Source: Sphaerodactylus townsendi
Lineage: Eukaryota
Assembly (NCBI RefSeq): GCF_021028975.2
Contig: NC_059430.1
Location: 110,546,001 to 110,610,000 of the forward strand
Reading direction: 5' to 3'
DNA: 64,000 bases
The translations under genes and the position numbers were made by a program. The notes under the pieces were generated by a model, which saw nothing but the letters and a program-made list of their open reading frames with translations, ran no database searches and was not told the DNA's origin. Below, one piece after another: positions 6,720 through 60,405 of the stretch (position 1 is its first letter; the number at the start of each line of letters is the position of its first letter).

Positions 6720-9700
6720 CTGTAAGTCAGAAGCGAAGAATGGCATGACTGAGCCAATCTTAGGCCCCTTCCGCACACGCAAAATAATGCGTTTTCAAAC
6801 CACTTCCACAACTGTTTGCAAGTGGATTTTGCTATTCCGCACAGCTTCAAAGAGCACTGAAAGCAGTTTGAAAGTGCATTATTCTGCATGTGCGGAATGA
6901 GCCTTAGATTTAGGCAGCCTTGATACCGGGAGGGAGTAGAGCATGACAAAATTGGTTTTAGCAGCCTAGGACCGACACGCAAGCAATGCAGACAAGTTCA
7001 GTTACTGGGTGCTGAATCAGAAGGACCAAACTCCAATGCATTTCAACTTGGCTCATTTAAGTGCTATTCAGGGGATGCCGTGAAAAATAAATTGCCGCAG
7101 TGTTAAGAGGGCAGAGCTAGGGGAATGGAACAACCCGCGCGGTATGCACCAGCCGTGACACAACTGGCTCCAAGCTAAACGCAGCCAGAGAAGTGATATG
7201 AAGCTTTTGTTACCAATGCACACCGCTTGGCACTATAGAAAAATCTTCACAGAGAACAGGAAACAAACAGGAGCTGAAGCCAGGCTCCAAACCCCCAGTT
7301 TTGGTAAGGACCGAGAAGGAATACTTTTCTAACTGTGGTGAAATGTATTCCGCTTTCGGCTACACTACATTGTTGGGGACTTACAAAAATCCCTCATATT
7401 GTTGAAGGCTTTCATGGCCAGAATCACTAGGGTATTGTGGGTTTTCCGGGTTGTATGGCCGTGTTCCAGTAGCATTTTCTCCTGACGTTTTGCCTGCATC
7501 TGTGGCTGGCATCTTTAGAGGATCCTCTGAAGATGCCAGCCACAGACACAGGTGAAACGTCAGGAGAAAATGCTACTGTGTTTCCCTGAAAATAAGCCCT
7601 ATCCCGAAAATAAGACCTATCATGATTTTTCAGGATTTTTGGAGGAGGCTTAAAATATAAGCCTTACTCCAAAAATAAGCCCTACCGGTGGTTACAGATC
7701 AGGATGGTGTGATCCAGCAGGGTGCTCCCTGCCAATGAGGATGCAGCTTGCATCACACGTGACAAGGAAGCAACGGGGCTGCTGAGAGCCCGCCTTAATG
7801 AATTGCGAAGGTGCAGTATTTCCTATAAAATAACCCCTACCCTGAAAATAAGCCCTAATGCATCTTTTGGTGCAAAAATTAAGACCCTGTCTTATTTTTG
7901 GGGAAACACCGTACTGGAACATGGCCATACAACCCGGAAAACCCATAACACCCTACTAAACTCCATATTCATCCTAAGTCTCTTTCCTGATACACAACAA
8001 GAAACAGGGGAGTGGTTAACTGCAAGGGGGTGGGCAGACACAGGACTTAAAATCCTCTGGGCATGAGGGGAACAGGGTGAGTTTTGTGTGACTTAATCTG
8101 GGATAACTTGGAGGCAGGAGTTCCCACATCTGGACTACAGGATGATGTCTGCCATTACTACACAGAGTCAAAAAGGGCAGGAAAGACTCAGGGTTATGGG
8201 TGACTGACCGAACAATGTAACACTGAGATGTAGATTTTAAAAAATCAACCTCCTGTTTTTCCAACAAGCCTTCTAGGTGCTCTGGCACCAATAAGATACC
8301 CTCCTGAAGTGCTGGGATCATCAAAAAGCACCCAGTTACTCACATCATTTCAAAGCATTGCTGCGTTGGTCTGCAGCAAAAGAGCAAGATTCAAGACCAG
8401 TAAGACTGTAGAGACTAGCAGGATTTTTAGGATATAAGTGTTCAAAGTGTCCCATCTCAGATATCTTCATCTGACAAAGATAACTTGGACTCTAATAAGC
8501 TTCTATCCTGGAAATCTTGTTGGTCTCTGAGGACATAGCTGCACTCGAATCTAGCTCAACTACTGAATCTGAGCATCAGTAGGAACCTCAGTAGAAGTGA
8601 TGCCTTGAAATCTGACTGTTTTCGTAGACAGTTTTGAAAGCAGCTTTGCACAGCCTCTTTCAAGGTGCCCTTAATGAGCCCAACAACACATACCACCACT
8701 TACTCTGGGCATTGTCTCTTTTCCACTGAGTCATCCAAAACCCACGGAGCTTTACATCCTTAAAAATCAAGGCACTCTGCAGAAGCAAGCAGGAGAAATG
8801 AAGTTTATTGAAGTATTGTAACAGAGTTTTGTATAGTTAGTGCAGGAAGAAATGGTAGCTTGCAATGACTGTGCTGATGGTGAAATGTAATAGGAATGAA
8901 TTTGTGTAAATCAAGAGCCAGTGTTAGATAGCAGTTAATATGTCCAACTAGTAGCAGGGAGACCTGAGTTTATGACATCAAAGATCCCATGAAGCTCCCT
9001 TAGTGACCTGGGGGAAGTCACTATCAGCCTATCCTAGCTTACCTCACAAGGGTCTTATGACAATAAAGTAGGGTAAGACTGAACCGCACCTACTGGCCTT
9101 CTTTCCTTAGAAGAGGAAGAAGACGGAGGGGGAGGAAGACAAAGCCCAAGGAAGATAGGGGAGGAGAACTGGGTTTTATACCCTACTTTTCTCAAAAAAG
9201 GTTTCAATTGCCTTCTCTTCTCTCCCCCAACTCTTCCCCACAACAGGCACCTTGTGAAGTAAATGGGGCTGGGAGAGTTCTGAGAGAACTGTGAATAGTC
9301 CAAGGTCACCCAACAGGGAGCATATGAGGGAATAGGGAAGCAAACCTGGTTCTCCAGATTAGAGTGGCTAGGAAGTGGAAAAATTTTGATTTAATTTAAC
9401 TGACACCCTCCCATGCACACCAACGGGAGTCCCAAAGCAGTTTACAACATCCCTTCATTTTATCCTCACAGTTACTCTGTGAGGTAGGTTAAATTAAGAA
9501 TCTGTGGCTGACTCAAGGTCATCCAGTGGACTTCCATGCAGAAAGGAGATTCAAATCTGAGTCCCTCAGATCCTGTTCTGACACTTTAACCAATAAAGAA
9601 ACCAACCGATGGATCGATGACATGCAAAATAAAATTTAAAATAAAACAATGCAATCAGAAATCTCACACCTACTCACCACGGGGATTGTGACAGGCTGTT

Positions 9701-15700: not shown

Positions 15701-18700
15701 TTCTGTATTCAGCCAGTAACAGTAAGGCTTAAAACAACCAGACTTATTTTTAATCCCATGGATGGGAGCAACGCATGGTATGTCTGAAATACAGGGTGTT
15801 GGAAAGTGTCTTCAAGCTGCAGCTAACTTATGGCAACCCTGTAAGTGTTCAAGGCAAGTGATGAACCAAAAAGGTTTGTTGCTGCCTGCCTCTGTGTAGC
15901 AACTCTGGACTACTTTGGCAATCTCCCATCCAAGTACTAACCAAGGCCTACCCTGTTCCAAAATAGGATGAGATCGAGTCAGCATAAAACGTGTAAATCA
16001 GGGCCTGAAATATGGAACCTGTAAACATGACCTCAGAATTACCCCTCAGCAAATTCTCCTGTCCCTGATAGACTGTCTAGCAGTTATCAAAGTGAGCTGG
16101 ACAGGGTAAAAAACAGAAGGTTGCTCCAAGTTCTCCAAATAGGCAACCTGTCCAGGAAGAGAGCAGTTCTGAAAAGACACTCACCTATCTCTGACCACAT
16201 TTATTGTTTTGATACCCTTGGCTGCAGCAATCTGGATGACAGCCTGTCCCACTCCGCTATTGGCTGCATTTTGGATGACAGAATCTCCTGCAGACAAAAA
16301 GATGCGGCTCTAGCTTTAAACTCGGTTGTTATCTTTCATTCTCAAAACAGCTGTGGAAGATGAGAAAGAAGGGGCAGCCGCATCAGCCCTAACACCAACT
16401 CATCAGTGTCCTTTATTCCTTATTGGAAGGGCCTGCTCTAAAAGTGGGGAAGTAGTTTGGTCGCCCTGTTGCTGCACCAAGGAAAAAGCAACTTAGCACT
16501 TGAGTGTTGTAGGGTTTCCGGGCTGTATGGCCATATTCCAGCAGCAATTTCTCCTGATATTTCACCTGGATCTGTGGCTGGCATCTTCAGAGGATCCAGT
16601 CACATTTTCTGGCTGGATCCAGTGGGGTTTCTGGGCCTCACAACAAAAACCCCATAGATTCCAGCCGTGAAAGGCTTTGACAATGACTTGGCTCTTGTTA
16701 GTGGTGTGGCAGAGCTGACTGTTAGCGTGGATGCTGAGGTTCAAACGATCACTGATCGGTAACAAACGAAAAAGAACCCACTGGTGTATATGAGGGGTTG
16801 AACGGACAAGAAGAAGAGCTGGTTTTTATACTGTTTTTTTCTCAACCTTTTCAAGGGATCTCAAAGAGGCTTACAAACTCCTTCCCTTCCTCTCCCCACA
16901 ACAGACATCTTGTGAGGCAGGTAGGTGGGGCTGAGAGAATTTGGAGAGAACTGTTGCGGGCCCAAGGCCACCCAGCAGGCTTCTTGCGGAGGAGCAGGGA
17001 AAACAAACCTGGTTCACCACATTAGAGTCTGCTGCTCATGCGGCGGAGTAGGGAATCAAACCTTGTTCTCCAGATTAGAGTCTGCTGCTCTTAACCACTA
17101 CACCATGCTGGTCTGCCCTTAATTTAGCAACCCTGGACATCCTTGGTGATCTCTTATCAAAGTACTAACCAAGGCCTACCTCTGCTTAGCTTCCTAGATT
17201 TGATAAGATTGGGCTAAGCTGGGCTATTCAGGCTGCAGGTAAGAATAAAACTGTCGTCAATTCCTCTCCATTCCTGGCTATCAAAAGTCACTTGAGTGGG
17301 GTGCAGGGTGGGGAATCCTGCACCACATGTGGAAGAAGCTAGATTTAGAAAGCCTTTTCCTTGGGATGGGGTGACTGAGTCACAGCCAAGAAGCAGCCAC
17401 CAAGAGTCAACAAGGAGGGAGAACCGATGCTGTCCAAGTCATCTGTACTCCCAATTCTTCCCATCTTCTGTACTGAAAGTCTAGCATTTCCATCCCCGTA
17501 AAACGAGAATGGATGCTGACTTTGTGCAACCCAACAGGTGGAGGTGAAGGAGAGGCAGAAGCCCCATCTGTAATAATAAGCTGAGTGCTCTGTGTCTAAG
17601 GAACCTCACGGAGGGAGGACCGGTCATTCTGGAAGCCAGCACATAATGATCGCCAGTGCTCCTTCTCGGCATCAGCCTGTGCCTCAAGGGTTCCTGTCTA
17701 ATACGGCAGCTCTGCTGAGCCAGAATTATGTTGTTATGAGCAACTCTCCCTTCTCTCTCCCTTAAACTAAAACCATCAGTTCTTTTTGTCACTGAATGCT
17801 TCCGCTGTAGCTACACGGGCACCCAAGTAACAAATCAACCGTTCATTCTCGTCCCCAAGGCTAGAGAAAAATAATACTTGGCCGAGGATGTGCTAAAAAA
17901 ATGAGTCATTGCTTATATGAACACTACAGAGTAAACTGTCAAATACATACCTGGCTTCAAGGTCTCAAAATCAGACAGCATCCGAAAAGCAGTGCAGGGG
18001 TTGACACTCAAGGTGGCTGCGGATACCAGTGGGATATCTGGGGGCATTTTCAAAAGCTTTTCCTCCTTGAACACTGCCTCTGTTTGCCAAGTCCCTGCAG
18101 CACAGGGGAAGCACAAGTCAGATGAAGAAGCTGCTGTTAGCTAACCAGTTTCATATCTACAGTTCAAGGTTTTTTAGAAGTCTTAAAAAAACACGTTAAG
18201 GGCTCCAGAGATTTTTAAAAAATCATACATGGCAACAATAGTAATTTGCTTGATGTTACTTTCACTGTCTTTAGATGGGTTAATAAAGACTTCAGCTTTG
18301 CTTAAGACCTAAATATCTCACTTGGGACCATTCTGTAGGATGCTTTTGACCAGGATCTTGGTCTCCAATCTCTCTTTTACTCTTCTAAGTCTGGCTTGGC
18401 ATGAGATGGCAAATGCAAAGTTTTGTCCAGTAATCTGGAATCACTCCCTTCCTCTAAAACAGAGGTATGCAACCTGCCGCTCTCCAGATGTTCATGGCCA
18501 ATTGGCCATGCTGGCAGGGGCTGATGGGATTTGTAGTCCATGAACATCTGGAGAGCCGCAGGGTGCAGATCCCTGCTCTTAAAGAGTTCAGAGCACACAT
18601 CATCTGATGCTAGAGAGCACAGCATGGGTAGTGGTTAACAACGGCAGATTTTAATCTGGAGATCCCGGTTCGATTCCCCATTCTTCCATGTGAAGCCTGC

Positions 18701-39170: not shown

Positions 39171-39357
39171 GTGGTTGCAGGGAGATTCAGATGGGGACTT
39201 TTAAACAGGAGTCTAGTGCTATGTTTCAAGCTAACGAGGTTTATTCCGGGATAAGCTCAGCCTACTTCAGTTAGGGATTTTAAAAAGCATTATTCCTTAA
39301 GATGCTGTTTTCAAAAATGTATGAGTATTTTATTTAAAAAAACACATTACAGGGGGT

Positions 39358-39569
39358 ATTGTCAAAGGCTTTCACGGCCGGAATCACTGGGATGCTGTGT
39401 GGTTGCCGGGCTGTATGGCCGTGTTCTAGCAGCATTCTTTCCTGACGTTTTGCCTGCATCTGTGGCTGGCATCAGATCCTTTGAAGATGCCAGCCACAGA
39501 TGCAGGCGAAACGTCAGGAGAGAATGCTGCTAGAACACGGCCATACAGCCCGGAAACCACACAGCACCC
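39358..39569. mobile_element. Palindromic PLE element (212 bp) immediately upstream of the MECR promoter
   Basis: ~85-bp inverted arms; 13-bp TSD CATTACAGG(G/T)GGT at 39345-39357 and 39570-39582; hammerhead-like motif at 39477-39519. Confidence 0.88.
39477..39519 (+). ncRNA. Hammerhead ribozyme motif with a C3->U core change
   Basis: TCCT-TTGAAGA-T-GCC..GGC-GAAA-CG-TC|AGGA. Confidence 0.6.
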
Positions 39570-39722
39570 CATTACAGGTGGTCTCTGGCTGAAATATGAA
39601 ATATTGAGAACCGCTTGAATATCCAAGTTGCTTCCACAGTTAAGGCAACATTATGACATCCAGTGACCCTTTCCAATGATAATATACCCCCTGTTGTATA
39701 GCAACAGCGTTGAGGAAATTTA

Positions 39723-39940
39723 CCGTGTTTCCTCAAAAATAAGACAGGGTCTTATATTAATTTTTGCTCCAAAAGATGCATTAGGGCTTATTTTAAGGGG
39801 ATGTCTTCTTTTTGGCACCCCCTACGCGACCACATCAGCTGCGCCTTGGGAATCTGTAACTAGGGCTTATTTTTGGAGTAGGGCTTATATTTCAAGCATC
39901 CTCCAAAAATCATGCTAGGGCTTATTTTCGGGGGGAAATA
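39723..39940. mobile_element. Tc2/pogo-type MITE (same family as 7576-7911)
   Basis: TA|CCGTGTTTCCTCAAAAATAAG TIR; TAGGGCTTATT repeats. Confidence 0.8.
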
Positions 39941-49904: not shown

Positions 49905-50053
49905 NNNNNNNNNNNNNNNNNNNNNNNNNNNNNNNNNNNNNNNNNNNNNNNNNNNNNNNNNNNNNNNNNNNNNNNNNNNNNNNNNNNNNNNNNNNNNNNN
50001 NNNNNNNNNNNNNNNNNNNNNNNNNNNNNNNNNNNNNNNNNNNNNNNNNNNNN
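49905..50053. other. Assembly gap (149 N) at the expected (GAA)n tail of an antisense SINE (50054-50303)
   Basis: Read directly. Confidence 0.99.
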
Positions 50054-59209: not shown

Positions 59210-60405
59210 TGCAAACACTAATGTTCCATAAATTCCACTACCATATTACGTAAGATCAATCCCTTTGCAAAAAAAAAAAAAAAAAGGTGGTAGGAAGGAA
59301 TTGTGAGTCCCAGGACTTCTGTTTGATGGGAATTGCTTGTGCTGTCTCTTTATGTGACATTCCTGCATGTATTAAATGTTATCAAGCCACAGTCAACCAC
59401 AGGGTTTTCAAGGCAAGAGATAAGCAGAAGTGGATTGCCATCTGCTGTCTCTGCATAGCAACCCTGGACTTTGGTAGCCATTTATGCATGCATTACTTAC
59501 CTGTGGCTATTTACTTTGCAGTAGTTTTCATGCATGGGGTGAGCAATTGTGAGGTTATAGTACGCAAACGCAAGTCATGTGGTCCTTCACTAGAGAGTTT
59601 GCTGCTGGTGGAAGAGTGGGATCAACTAGTGGGATCTCTGAAGACTTTTCTACAATTGTACCCTGAGTATTAGTCCTCCTTCCACTTCCCCGTCCCTCAT
59701 TCATTAATTTAGCTTGACATCTCAACTTCTGCTGTGGCAGACATCATCAACTGGAGCCATAGTTTCTGAGTTGTTGGGGTTGTTATTGCTGACCTGTAAG
59801 TAGGGGATTCAGGAGAAGGTGTGGGAGCTGTTGCAAATTTCTTAGTGCAGAGATATTTTCCCTGCACTTGCTCCACTCCAGCAAGTATGCTCTGCACAGT
59901 GCTACAACAGAAGTTTGCTGTTTTCCTCTCTTTCTTGCAGTCATGAAACTGTCTTTCCGCCCATTTGTTTGCAGACACAGCAGAATAGCTGAGGAGATTT
60001 TACTGTTTACCATTCTGGCTCTTCCTTTGGTGCAGGCGTACGGTTTGCTGTATGAAGTGGTTTCTTTTCTTAGCTCTGGAGGCTGTTTCCCACCTTTTCC
60101 CCTTTGTTTCCCTTCACCACTGCTTTGCTTTCTCAAGTCGCTGAAAAGTTTCTTTTTGCAGCATTGGAAGCTATTTCCTTGCCTTTTTTCCTGGCTGGCA
60201 CAACACAGTGGCTACTACTCCCCCTGCCTGTTGTGAGACAAAGGAAGGAAGAATTATGTTGTGTTTGACAGGGATATACTTTTTCCCTGCAGTTATTTAT
60301 TTTGCTTGCTTGCTCCTTTTAGCTGGCTCTTTGGAGAGTTAAAAAAAGGGTAGTTTCAGTGAGTCTTATCCCCTCAAGGCGATTGAATCTTAGAGTCTCC
60401 TAGAC

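What the first reader, a model, noticed from the sequence alone, without database searches (positions are those of the whole stretch)
39345..39582. A ~210-nt palindromic retroelement built to carry a hammerhead ribozyme on both strands, mobilised as a unit (3 copies)
Seen: three independent loci (7398-7954, 16503-16684 inverted, 39358-39569) share one architecture. Each has two inverted ~85-90-nt arms meeting at (GAG)GATC(CTC), a ~30-nt overhang on one side only (ATTGT..AAGGCTTTCA.GGCC.GAATCAC), the same end points, and no coding capacity. Two copies have 13-bp direct repeats at the flanks (12/13 identical here, 10/13 at 16.5 kb). The arm consensus reads TCCT-CTGAAGA-T-GCC-loop-GGC-GAAA-CG-TC|AGGA, although most arms carry core mutations and one is deleted. 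Established: this is the minimal type-I hammerhead (CUGANGA/GAAA core, palindromic 4-nt stem III that needs dimerisation) found in Penelope-like retroelements, and PLEs can form inverted terminal repeats. Inference: identical junctions plus TSDs argue for a discrete non-autonomous, retrozyme-like family rather than random 5'-inversion events. Its RNA would be a rod-like hairpin with a ribozyme in each polarity, reminiscent of viroid-like RNAs, and borrowing an autonomous PLE RT/GIY-YIG endonuclease.
Basis: partly seen in the sequence, partly recalled or inferred. Interest (0 to 1): 0.8.

Follow-up and report, generated by a model that had tools for sequence, protein, structure and literature searches.

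The report
Dead head-to-head Penelope retrotransposon stubs
The three ~200-base palindromes are real. They are ordinary, decayed stubs left by insertions of a Poseidon/Penelope-like retrotransposon, and their inverted arms, one-sided "tail" and fixed outer ends are already published features of how these elements integrate.

Summary
The window has exactly three copies: 39358-39571, 7398-7954 (with a nested 335-nt foreign element) and 16504-16684. Each has head-to-head arms and a ~30-nt extension on one side only. One TSD is strong (12/13).

Each arm is nt -10 to about +85 or +115 of a Poseidon-type Penelope-like element, that is, the hammerhead plus the first 28-38 ORF codons. The outer ends match the two published reverse-transcription start sites of the Anolis element PAc, and the "overhang" is the published PLE "tail". 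Head-to-head truncated copies inside a single TSD are also a published PLE layout.

No copy has an intact hammerhead on both strands: 0 of 6 arms pass a strict descriptor and 2 of 6 pass a relaxed one. A unit-length RNA would fold into a ~90-bp duplex (-172 to -179 kcal/mol) that buries the ribozyme. The stubs also lack part of the first 172 ORF nt that PAc RNA needs as a template in vitro. Copy C has a second inversion point, and public contigs from four related species show variable junctions and tandem forms.

Verdict: known kind, low interest. One detail is unexplained: the constant -10 inner boundary. Other agents of this scan reached the same verdict on other pieces of this genome.

The parts
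39345..39357 (.). Copy A, left target-site duplication CATTACAGGGGGT (contains ATT)
   Evidence: 12/13 match with 39570-39582, p~0.002 against random flank pairs
39358..39387 (-). Copy A 'tail': sense on the minus strand, about +86..+115 of the Poseidon ORF (GTGATTCCGGCCGTGAAAGCCTTTGACAAT)
   Evidence: corresponds to the published ~34-nt tail, nt ~85-119 of PAc. A genome-wide boundary with AT-rich flanks lies at 39356/7 (table 7)
39388..39476 (-). Copy A tailed arm (sense on the minus strand). Hammerhead dead: CUGAAGA box deleted and G12>A
39477..39571 (+). Copy A tail-less arm, -10..+85; ATG at 39487. Hammerhead has C3>U (UUGAAGA); the rest of the core is intact, including G10.1-C11.1
   Evidence: In one search, table 3, about 96% of family contig depth reads C at 39481, so the T is a private mutation
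39570..39582 (.). Copy A, right target-site duplication CATTACAGGTGGT (its first 2 nt are ambiguous with the arm end)
7398..7429 (-). Copy B tail, about +84..+115
7430..7522 (-). Copy B tailed arm, -10..+83. Hammerhead dead (G5>A, G12>A)
7523..7577 (+). Copy B tail-less arm, 5' part (-10..+45). The hammerhead at 7523-7565 has an intact core but G.U at 10.1-11.1; predicted cut between 7561 and 7562
7578..7912 (.). Nested foreign element with ~23-nt terminal inverted repeats that interrupts copy B's short arm. Not part of the PLE
   Evidence: same family as the element at ~39722-39940
7913..7954 (+). Copy B tail-less arm, 3' part (to about +84)
   Evidence: (I2)
16491..16502 (.). Copy C putative TSD, left copy ACTTAGCACTTG
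   Evidence: 10/12 match with 16686-16697, p~0.03
16504..16597 (-). Copy C tail-less arm, -10..+81. The hammerhead at 16594-16552 has an intact core, G.U at 10.1-11.1, and helix III ACGU>AUAU
16598..16633 (.). Copy C rearranged filler: a ~16-nt antisense fragment (about +48..+33, overlapping the centre) and a ~23-nt inverted copy of the tail region. This creates a second inversion point
   Evidence: (I1, I2, D1)
16634..16684 (+). Copy C partial tailed arm, about +52..+115 with internal gaps. No hammerhead
16686..16697 (.). Copy C putative TSD, right copy ACTTGGCTCTTG

Best explanation
Each locus is a dead-on-arrival, extremely 5'-truncated insertion of a Poseidon-clade Penelope-like retrotransposon. 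It was made in one integration event as two head-to-head cDNA stubs.

Shown:
- Every arm is nt -10 to about +85 (no tail) or about +115 (with tail) of the element's pLTR-ORF junction. That stretch holds the minimal hammerhead and the first 28-38 codons.
- The outer ends fall on the two reverse-transcription start sites mapped for the Anolis element PAc.
- One TSD brackets the whole unit.

Inferred:
- The element's protein cuts both target strands, as PAc does in vitro.
- Reverse transcription starts internally at one or the other start site.
- Either two cDNAs, or one cDNA that snaps back on itself, end at about -10 and are joined head to head.

This gives a palindrome that carries 0, 1 or 2 tails. 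The hammerhead is there only because it sits at the start of the ORF. After insertion the copies decay neutrally, mostly at CpG sites. They are not templates for further copies.
For: (1) Homology. The arms match nt 1-116 of the Poseidon_Ac consensus. The ATG sits at the start of helix II, and the cut site is 26 nt after the ATG, as published for PAc. The arm peptides are [28 protein letters not shown] and ...[10 protein letters not shown]; the PAc peptide is [38 protein letters not shown].

(2) Ends. The short arms end at +81..+85 and the long arms at +115. The published tail spans about nt 85-119, and the RT start sites define its boundaries.

(3) Layout. An inverted 5'-truncated copy, a 30-40-bp tail on one end only, TSDs, and palindromes at the inverted junction are all published for PLEs. 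PAc cleaves and extends both target strands.

(4) Target. Copy A's 13-bp TSD contains ATT, the preferred PAc cut motif.

(5) Arms pair by copy. Identity is 94.1% and 91.8% within copies, against 80-89% between copies. Seven copy-diagnostic sites are shared by both arms. The only arm-specific site shared between copies is a CpG. So both arms of a copy came from one source RNA type, and nothing indicates an inherited left/right asymmetry.

(6) Genome-wide contigs. Between 20,000 and 48,000 contigs per run were laid in four related species. AT-rich, unrelated flanks begin at both outer ends. Non-palindromic copies continue upstream of -8 into pLTR-like sequence. Variable inverted joints and head-to-tail joints also occur. 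CpG positions of the hammerhead are the most variable.

(7) Age. Copy A is present at the same locus in three species' contigs (table 8), so it is old and vertically inherited.
Against: - Five of the six arms start at exactly -10, immediately 5' of hammerhead helix I. Simple random 5' truncation does not predict this. None of the papers I read describes it for this family.
- All three copies have exactly one tail. With roughly equal use of the two start sites, the chance of that is about 0.125, which is not significant.
- Contig data cannot give frequencies of the junction classes.
- The mechanism steps (dual priming or snap-back, then joining) are inferred from in vitro work on a related element that is about 80% identical in this region. 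They were not observed here.
Confidence: 0.8

Rival explanations
1. The ~210-nt palindrome is a discrete non-autonomous element, retrozyme- or viroid-like. It is transcribed as a unit and copied again and again in trans by an autonomous PLE, and its design places a hammerhead on each strand.
For: The -10/-10 centre is constant in copies A and B, and the intact arm of C also starts at -10. Other palindromic copies with the same centre exist in four species (table 8, records crossing 39474-39486). The family is very abundant. A. vaga pLTRs can mobilise unrelated sequence in trans.
Against: - The unit lacks ORF nt ~116-172, although in vitro the minimum PAc template RNA needs the first 172 nt of the ORF.
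- An RT that starts internally would have no defined stop at the unit's far end unless transcription began exactly there.
- The sense hammerhead is always the 3' half and would zip into a -172 to -179 kcal/mol duplex, against -7 to -9 kcal/mol for the ribozyme fold.
- The min-HHR needs a second sense copy to form helix III. A palindrome supplies only an antisense copy.
- Zero of three copies have two intact ribozymes.
- There is no inherited arm asymmetry.
- Copy C and the genome-wide joints show other inversion points.
Confidence: 0.1
2. The stubs are PLE debris by origin, but some now serve the host as intronic long-hairpin sources of small RNAs (endo-siRNA or piRNA) against active Poseidon elements.
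For: The predicted ~90-bp near-perfect hairpins have z about -23, and miRNA-precursor covariance models pick them up below threshold. Small-RNA profiles over inverted PLE structures are reported in A. vaga.
Against: There are no expression data here; no RNA run held the locus. The arms have diverged 6-8% with CpG decay, and one copy is interrupted by another transposon, which looks neutral. Any such activity would be a by-product and not a reason for the architecture.
Confidence: 0.05
3. The palindromes arose after insertion, either by local inverted duplication or by two independent insertions that landed head to head.
For: None specific. Copy B lacks a clear TSD.
Against: One 12/13 TSD brackets the whole of copy A, and a 10/12 TSD brackets copy C. 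The same spacer-less centre recurs at independent loci and in thousands of contigs. Both arms of a copy share subfamily variants.
Confidence: 0.03

Closest known systems
Poseidon_Ac / PAc, the Penelope-like element of Anolis carolinensis (Arkhipova 2006 Repbase entry; PMC11167929)
   Same: - The pLTR-ORF junction has the same organisation: CUGANGA box just before the ATG, ATG at the start of helix II, and the cut site 26 nt after the ATG.
- The N-terminal peptide is homologous (18/28 and 7/10 identities by eye).
- Copy ends lie at the two RT start sites that bound the ~34-nt tail.
- The target is AT-rich and contains ATT.
   Different: About 20% nucleotide divergence in this region, so this is a different Poseidon/Penelope subfamily. 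Helix II carries an A.A mismatch where PAc has U.G. No RT/GIY-YIG ORF is present in these copies or anywhere near them in the window.
Standard PLE insertion layout: inverted 5'-truncated copy plus one-sided 30-40-bp tail (Evgen'ev & Arkhipova 2005, as summarised in PMC8557442; A. vaga Pen2a in PMC3846280; D. virilis Penelope in PMC2377424)
   Same: Head-to-head inverted repeats, a tail on one end only, a single TSD of variable length around the whole structure, and a palindrome at the inverted junction.
   Different: Here nothing lies between the inverted arms: no ORF and no direct pLTR. Each copy is only a pair of ~95-125-nt stubs, and the inner boundary is the same (-10) in five of six arms.
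Minimal type-I hammerhead of metazoan PLEs (Cervera & de la Pena 2014, PMC4209133)
   Same: [quoted passage not shown] Dual motifs on opposite strands 100-700 bp apart were already noted in that paper.
   Different: In this window every arm carries at least one deviation from the canonical core or closing pair. Rfam models do not detect them.
Animal non-LTR retrozymes (PMC7229834; bioRxiv 10.64898/2026.07.22.740005)
   Same: Short non-coding hammerhead-bearing derivatives of PLE pLTRs. Head-to-tail joints of this family's arm do occur elsewhere in the genome (table 5c).
   Different: Retrozymes are head-to-tail tandem repeats, so neighbouring sense ribozymes can dimerise and release circular RNA. 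The copies here are head to head, which gives one sense ribozyme per transcript, paired to its complement.

Membership tests
Truncated Penelope-like element insertion (Poseidon clade) | Sequence homology to a PLE pLTR-ORF junction | tested here: met
   The arms align by eye to nt 1-116 of the Poseidon_Ac consensus. The translated arms match the N-terminus of Poseidon_Ac_1p. No formal alignment was run, because the consensus exists only as paper text and was not typed into tools.
Truncated Penelope-like element insertion (Poseidon clade) | 3' ends at the internal RT-initiation sites; optional 30-40-bp tail on one end | tested here: met
   Ends lie at +81..+85 and +115, and the tails are 30-32 nt. 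Published: tail at about nt 85-119, RT starts at 111-118. Genome-wide boundaries lie at the same places (table 7).
Truncated Penelope-like element insertion (Poseidon clade) | Inverted 5'-truncated copy adjoining, with one TSD around the whole unit | tested here: met
   A 12/13 (p~0.002); C 10/12 (p~0.03); B not significant.
Truncated Penelope-like element insertion (Poseidon clade) | RT + GIY-YIG ORF (autonomous copy) | tested here: not met
   Only the first 28-38 codons are present. This is expected for truncated copies, so it excludes autonomy and not membership.
PLE minimal type-I hammerhead | CUGANGA and GAAA core, an extra nucleotide between 9 and 10.1, palindromic 15.2-16.2, and a helix I of at least 3 bp | tested here: met
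   Met by the family consensus (majority letters, table 3). Met by 2 of 6 arms under a relaxed descriptor, against a chance rate of 0.005 per window.
PLE minimal type-I hammerhead | Conserved G10.1-C11.1 pair together with an intact core in the same arm | tested here: not met
   The strict descriptor gave 0 of 6 arms. The only arm with G-C has C3>U. The two arms with an intact core have G.U.
PLE minimal type-I hammerhead | Match to curated hammerhead covariance models | tested here: not met
   No Rfam hammerhead hit at the gathering score or at E<=10. I think those models fit helix-III-less variants poorly, but that is my own knowledge and was not tested.
PLE minimal type-I hammerhead | Self-cleavage after the GUC (as a dimer or with protein help) | not testable with these tools
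   Published for the related PAc motif as protein-assisted cleavage. Not measured for this subfamily.
Animal non-LTR retrozyme | Head-to-tail tandem monomers, each with a sense hammerhead | tested here: not met
   All three window copies are head to head. Tandem joints were seen only in contigs from elsewhere in the genome.
Animal non-LTR retrozyme | Circular RNA products | not testable with these tools
   No RNA run held the locus, and the one read-laying run went to DNA contigs.
Viroid-like RNA with ribozymes in both polarities | Intact self-cleaving motif in each polarity | tested here: not met
   No copy has two arms that pass even the relaxed descriptor.
MITE / foldback DNA transposon | Terminal inverted repeats with a fixed-length TSD and no retroelement homology | tested here: not met
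   The ends are asymmetric (one-sided tail), the TSD is 11-13 bp or absent, and the arms are PLE ORF sequence.

The most novel reading that the evidence does not exclude
A subset of these head-to-head stubs is not dead on arrival. It is transcribed, for example from host introns, and re-mobilised in trans as a palindromic unit by Poseidon RT/EN. The constant -10 centre would then be a property of a replicating non-autonomous lineage. A milder version is more likely, perhaps 0.3, but less novel. In that version, -10 marks a defined 5' end or strong-stop of the Poseidon template RNA, and the palindromes are the in vivo footprint of the dual-strand priming seen in vitro for PAc.
Probability: 0.07. 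Interest if true: 0.55.

Novelty: already known. Interest (0 to 1): 0.14.

Why it matters
It matters mainly for bookkeeping. This genome holds tens of thousands of contig-level pieces of this family, and the scan has flagged the same palindromes repeatedly. Recognising them as standard Poseidon/Penelope insertion stubs stops them being mistaken for new ribozyme devices, miRNA precursors or viroid-like elements.

One point may be of modest value to PLE specialists. The arms stereotypically start at -10, exactly at the 5' edge of hammerhead helix I. If a census confirms this genome-wide, it could help decide between two models of PLE integration: self-priming (snap-back) and priming from both target strands.

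Tried and rejected
- Rfam at the gathering score on the whole window, and at E<=10 on two copies, gave no hammerhead. It gave only sub-threshold miRNA-hairpin hits (61.7 bits against a gathering score of 100, and similar), which I reject as artefacts of the long stem.
- Two exact-pattern scans of metagenome contigs and one of viral contigs, meant to fetch more copies, found nothing. These collections are not expected to hold vertebrate DNA, so the blanks mean nothing.
- I looked for an empty-site allele in related species. Contigs of three species carry the copy A insertion, so no empty site was seen.
- No RNA run held the locus, so expression, RNA ends and circles could not be examined.
- A transcription start site at -10 could not be supported. 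The D. virilis Penelope TSS lies 46 bp upstream of a 75-bp intron, and, per Cervera & de la Pena, that intron ends at the 5' end of helix I. Nothing comparable is available for the lizard family.
- An nhmmer hit at 59706-59750 (E=0.029) may be an ancient hammerhead remnant or may be chance. I did not pursue it.
- PMC522041 (Pyatkov 2004, Penelope EN/RT) is not held. The Lunse et al. 2017 paper on dimeric PLE hammerheads is not in the library and was not read.
- Repbase and Dfam could not be queried, so I could not check directly whether this exact subfamily consensus is catalogued.
- The N run at 49905-50053 was left untouched.

Full report
**What is there**

blastn with the 212-nt unit and an nhmmer profile of the arms find these three copies and no other convincing fragment in the 64 kb.

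- Copy A (39358-39571) has 86-nt arms that are 95% complementary, with 12 nt of a damaged centre between them. It has a 30-nt extension on the left only. It is flanked by CATTACAGGGGGT / CATTACAGGTGGT, and only 1 of 500 random flank pairs scored as well.
- Copy B (7398-7954) has a spacer-less centre, GAGGA|TCCTC, at 7522|7523 and a 32-nt extension on the left. An unrelated 335-nt element with ~23-nt terminal inverted repeats is nested in its short arm (7578-7912). Its flanks show no significant TSD.
- Copy C (16504-16684, opposite orientation) has an intact tail-less arm and a 10/12 flanking repeat (p~0.03). Its tailed arm is not merely deleted. Only about +52..+115 survives (16634-16684). Before it lie a 16-nt antisense fragment and a 23-nt inverted copy of the tail region. 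So this copy contains a second inversion point.

**What the arms are**

The paper on the Anolis carolinensis element PAc (PMC11167929) supplies the Poseidon_Ac consensus. Read in the hammerhead-sense direction, every arm is the pLTR-ORF junction of such an element:

- 10 nt of upstream sequence (UCCUCUGAAG);
- then the ATG, which opens hammerhead helix II;
- the GUC cut site 26 nt after the ATG, exactly as described for PAc;
- then the first 28 codons (tail-less arm) or 38 codons (tailed arm).

The translations are [28 protein letters not shown] and [38 protein letters not shown]. The PAc peptide is [38 protein letters not shown]. Nucleotide similarity in this region is about 80% by eye, so this is a related Poseidon/Penelope subfamily and not PAc itself. 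Counted from the ATG, the tail-less arms end at +81 to +85 and the tailed arms at +115.

**Why the ends and the overhang are not new**

- The PAc study shows that reverse transcription starts internally at two adjacent places in the RNA.
- It also shows that the optional ~34-nt "tail" of genomic copies (about nt 85-119) is the stretch between those start sites, and that genomic copy ends fall on them.
- Craig et al. [quoted passage not shown]
- Arkhipova et al. 2013 (PMC3846280) describe inverted pLTRs with a one-sided 31-bp tail inside an 8-10-bp TSD. They report palindromes at the inverted junction and interpret these as self-priming.
- The D. virilis literature says the same of the type element.
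- PAc protein cuts and extends both target strands in vitro and prefers ATT in AT-rich DNA. Copy A's TSD contains ATT.

**Genome-wide view**

The only access to other copies was one read-laying run, on contigs of four runs from four related organisms (names coded).

- Between 20,883 and 47,596 contigs per run were laid on the unit at 80% identity or better, while the flanks are single-copy. The family is therefore very abundant in all four.
- Contigs from three organisms bridge the flank-element junctions of copy A itself (table 8). The insertion therefore predates their divergence, and no empty site was seen.
- Hundreds of contigs per run leave the reference exactly at 39356/7 and at 39571 and run into AT-rich, mutually unrelated sequence (agreement 0.36-0.40). 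Both outer ends are therefore true family boundaries.
- About 160-235 contigs per run leave the sense arm just upstream of -8 and continue into a shared, non-palindromic sequence (...CACATCTCACTGTGACATG, agreement ~0.5). This resembles the end of the PAc pLTR. Longer, non-inverted copies therefore exist, and the GGA|TCC centre is a junction and not a parental motif.
- Some joints link tail-region positions 39380-39400 directly to 39475-39482. Back-joints run from +83/+85, or from +62/+65, to the -13..-5 region with 2-10 extra letters, which indicates head-to-tail arrays.
- The inner boundary therefore clusters near -10 to -5, but its partner varies.
- The most variable positions in the sense arm are the CpGs of the hammerhead: 39507, and 39512/39513 (table 3). 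That is the signature of neutral decay. The tool warns that contig depth is not copy number, so I draw no frequencies from it.

**Is it a two-strand ribozyme device?**

- The consensus fits the PLE min-HHR features listed by Cervera & de la Pena (PMC4209133): the CUGANGA/GAAA core, an extra nucleotide between 9 and 10.1 (here U), a long helix II, a palindromic ACGU in place of helix III, and a 4-bp helix I.
- My own descriptor found no arm that satisfies the strict version. Two arms pass when G.U is allowed at 10.1-11.1 (7523-7565 on +, 16594-16552 on -), against 0.005 hits per shuffled window.
- The other arms carry C3>U, G5>A, G12>A or a deleted CUGAAGA box, or are missing. No copy has a plausible ribozyme in both polarities.
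- Rfam finds no hammerhead at all.
- A unit-length transcript of either strand folds into a ~90-bp duplex of -178.9 or -172.3 kcal/mol (z about -23). The isolated hammerhead region folds at -7.4 to -9.2 kcal/mol, no better than shuffles.
- Because the arms are head to head, the sense ribozyme is the 3' half in both polarities. Its perfect complement has already been transcribed when it emerges.
- The min-HHR needs a second sense copy to build helix III. A palindrome provides only an antisense one. The geometry that suits these ribozymes is the head-to-tail tandem of retrozymes, not this one.

**Is it mobilised as a unit?**

- Arms pair by copy: 94.1% identity in A and 91.8% in B, against 80-89% between copies. 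Seven sites have the same state in both arms of a copy but differ between copies.
- The only site where the tailed arms of A and B agree with each other against their tail-less partners is a CpG (CG>CA), so parallel decay is the simplest reading.
- This fits arms that were born identical from one RNA type. It gives no sign of an inherited left/right asymmetry, although three copies are too few to exclude one.
- In vitro, the minimum PAc template RNA requires the first 172 nt of the ORF. The stubs end at +85 or +115, so they lack part of that region.
- An RT that starts internally also gives no reason for a new copy to end precisely at the far boundary of a palindromic template.

**What remains unexplained**

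Five of six arms begin at exactly -10, the first nucleotide of helix I. Earlier notes of this scan report perfect 188-bp palindromes elsewhere in this genome. That length equals two tail-less arms of 94 nt, although I could not inspect those sequences. Random 5' truncation does not predict a fixed start. Three explanations are possible:

- a defined 5' end of the template RNA, giving run-off cDNAs from both target strands;
- a preferred stop or snap-back point at the base of the folded ribozyme;
- microhomology at a short palindrome, since some tandem joints seem to keep a few antisense letters before -10.

I could not decide among them with the tools at hand.

**Verdict**

The hammerhead and PLE assignment is right. 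The claim of a new, purpose-built palindromic retroelement is not supported. These are ordinary, old, decaying head-to-head stubs of a Poseidon-type Penelope-like element, a published layout produced by a published mechanism.

Other follow-up agents of this scan reached the same conclusion on other pieces of the same genome. I treated that as a lead only and rest the verdict on the tests above.

Noticed in passing
window 7578-7912 and about 39722-39940: Two copies of a second, very abundant non-coding family. It has ~23-nt terminal inverted repeats (GTGTTTCCC.GAAAATAAG... / ...CTTATTTT.GGGGAAACAC) and internal 'AAAATAAGCCCTA' sub-repeats, and looks MITE-like. One copy is nested inside copy B of the PLE stub with a possible 5-bp TSD (TACTG). 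The other lies 150 bp downstream of copy A and shows huge contig depth in all four species.
   Followed up: partly
window 59706-59750 (minus strand): A weak nhmmer match (E=0.029) of the arm profile to TTGATGATGTCTGCCACAGCAGAAGTTGAGATGTCAAG. It may be a much older, degraded PLE hammerhead remnant, or it may be chance.
   Followed up: no
window 39474-39482 (inner boundary), seen in contigs of runs X1, X4, X5, X7: Contigs from elsewhere in these genomes join the end of a sense arm (+83/+85, or +62/+65) back to the -13..-5 region with 2-10 extra letters. This means head-to-tail, retrozyme-like arrays of the same ~70-100-nt hammerhead unit exist alongside the palindromes.
   Followed up: partly
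window 39519/39520, seen in contigs: About 300 contigs per run share the hammerhead up to +33 and then switch to a different, well-conserved continuation (..ACAAGATCTACCAGACCACGGCCACACAGC, agreement ~0.7). This looks like a second Poseidon subfamily with the same ribozyme but a different early ORF.
   Followed up: no
window 49905-50053: A run of 149 N (assembly gap or masked stretch).
   Followed up: no
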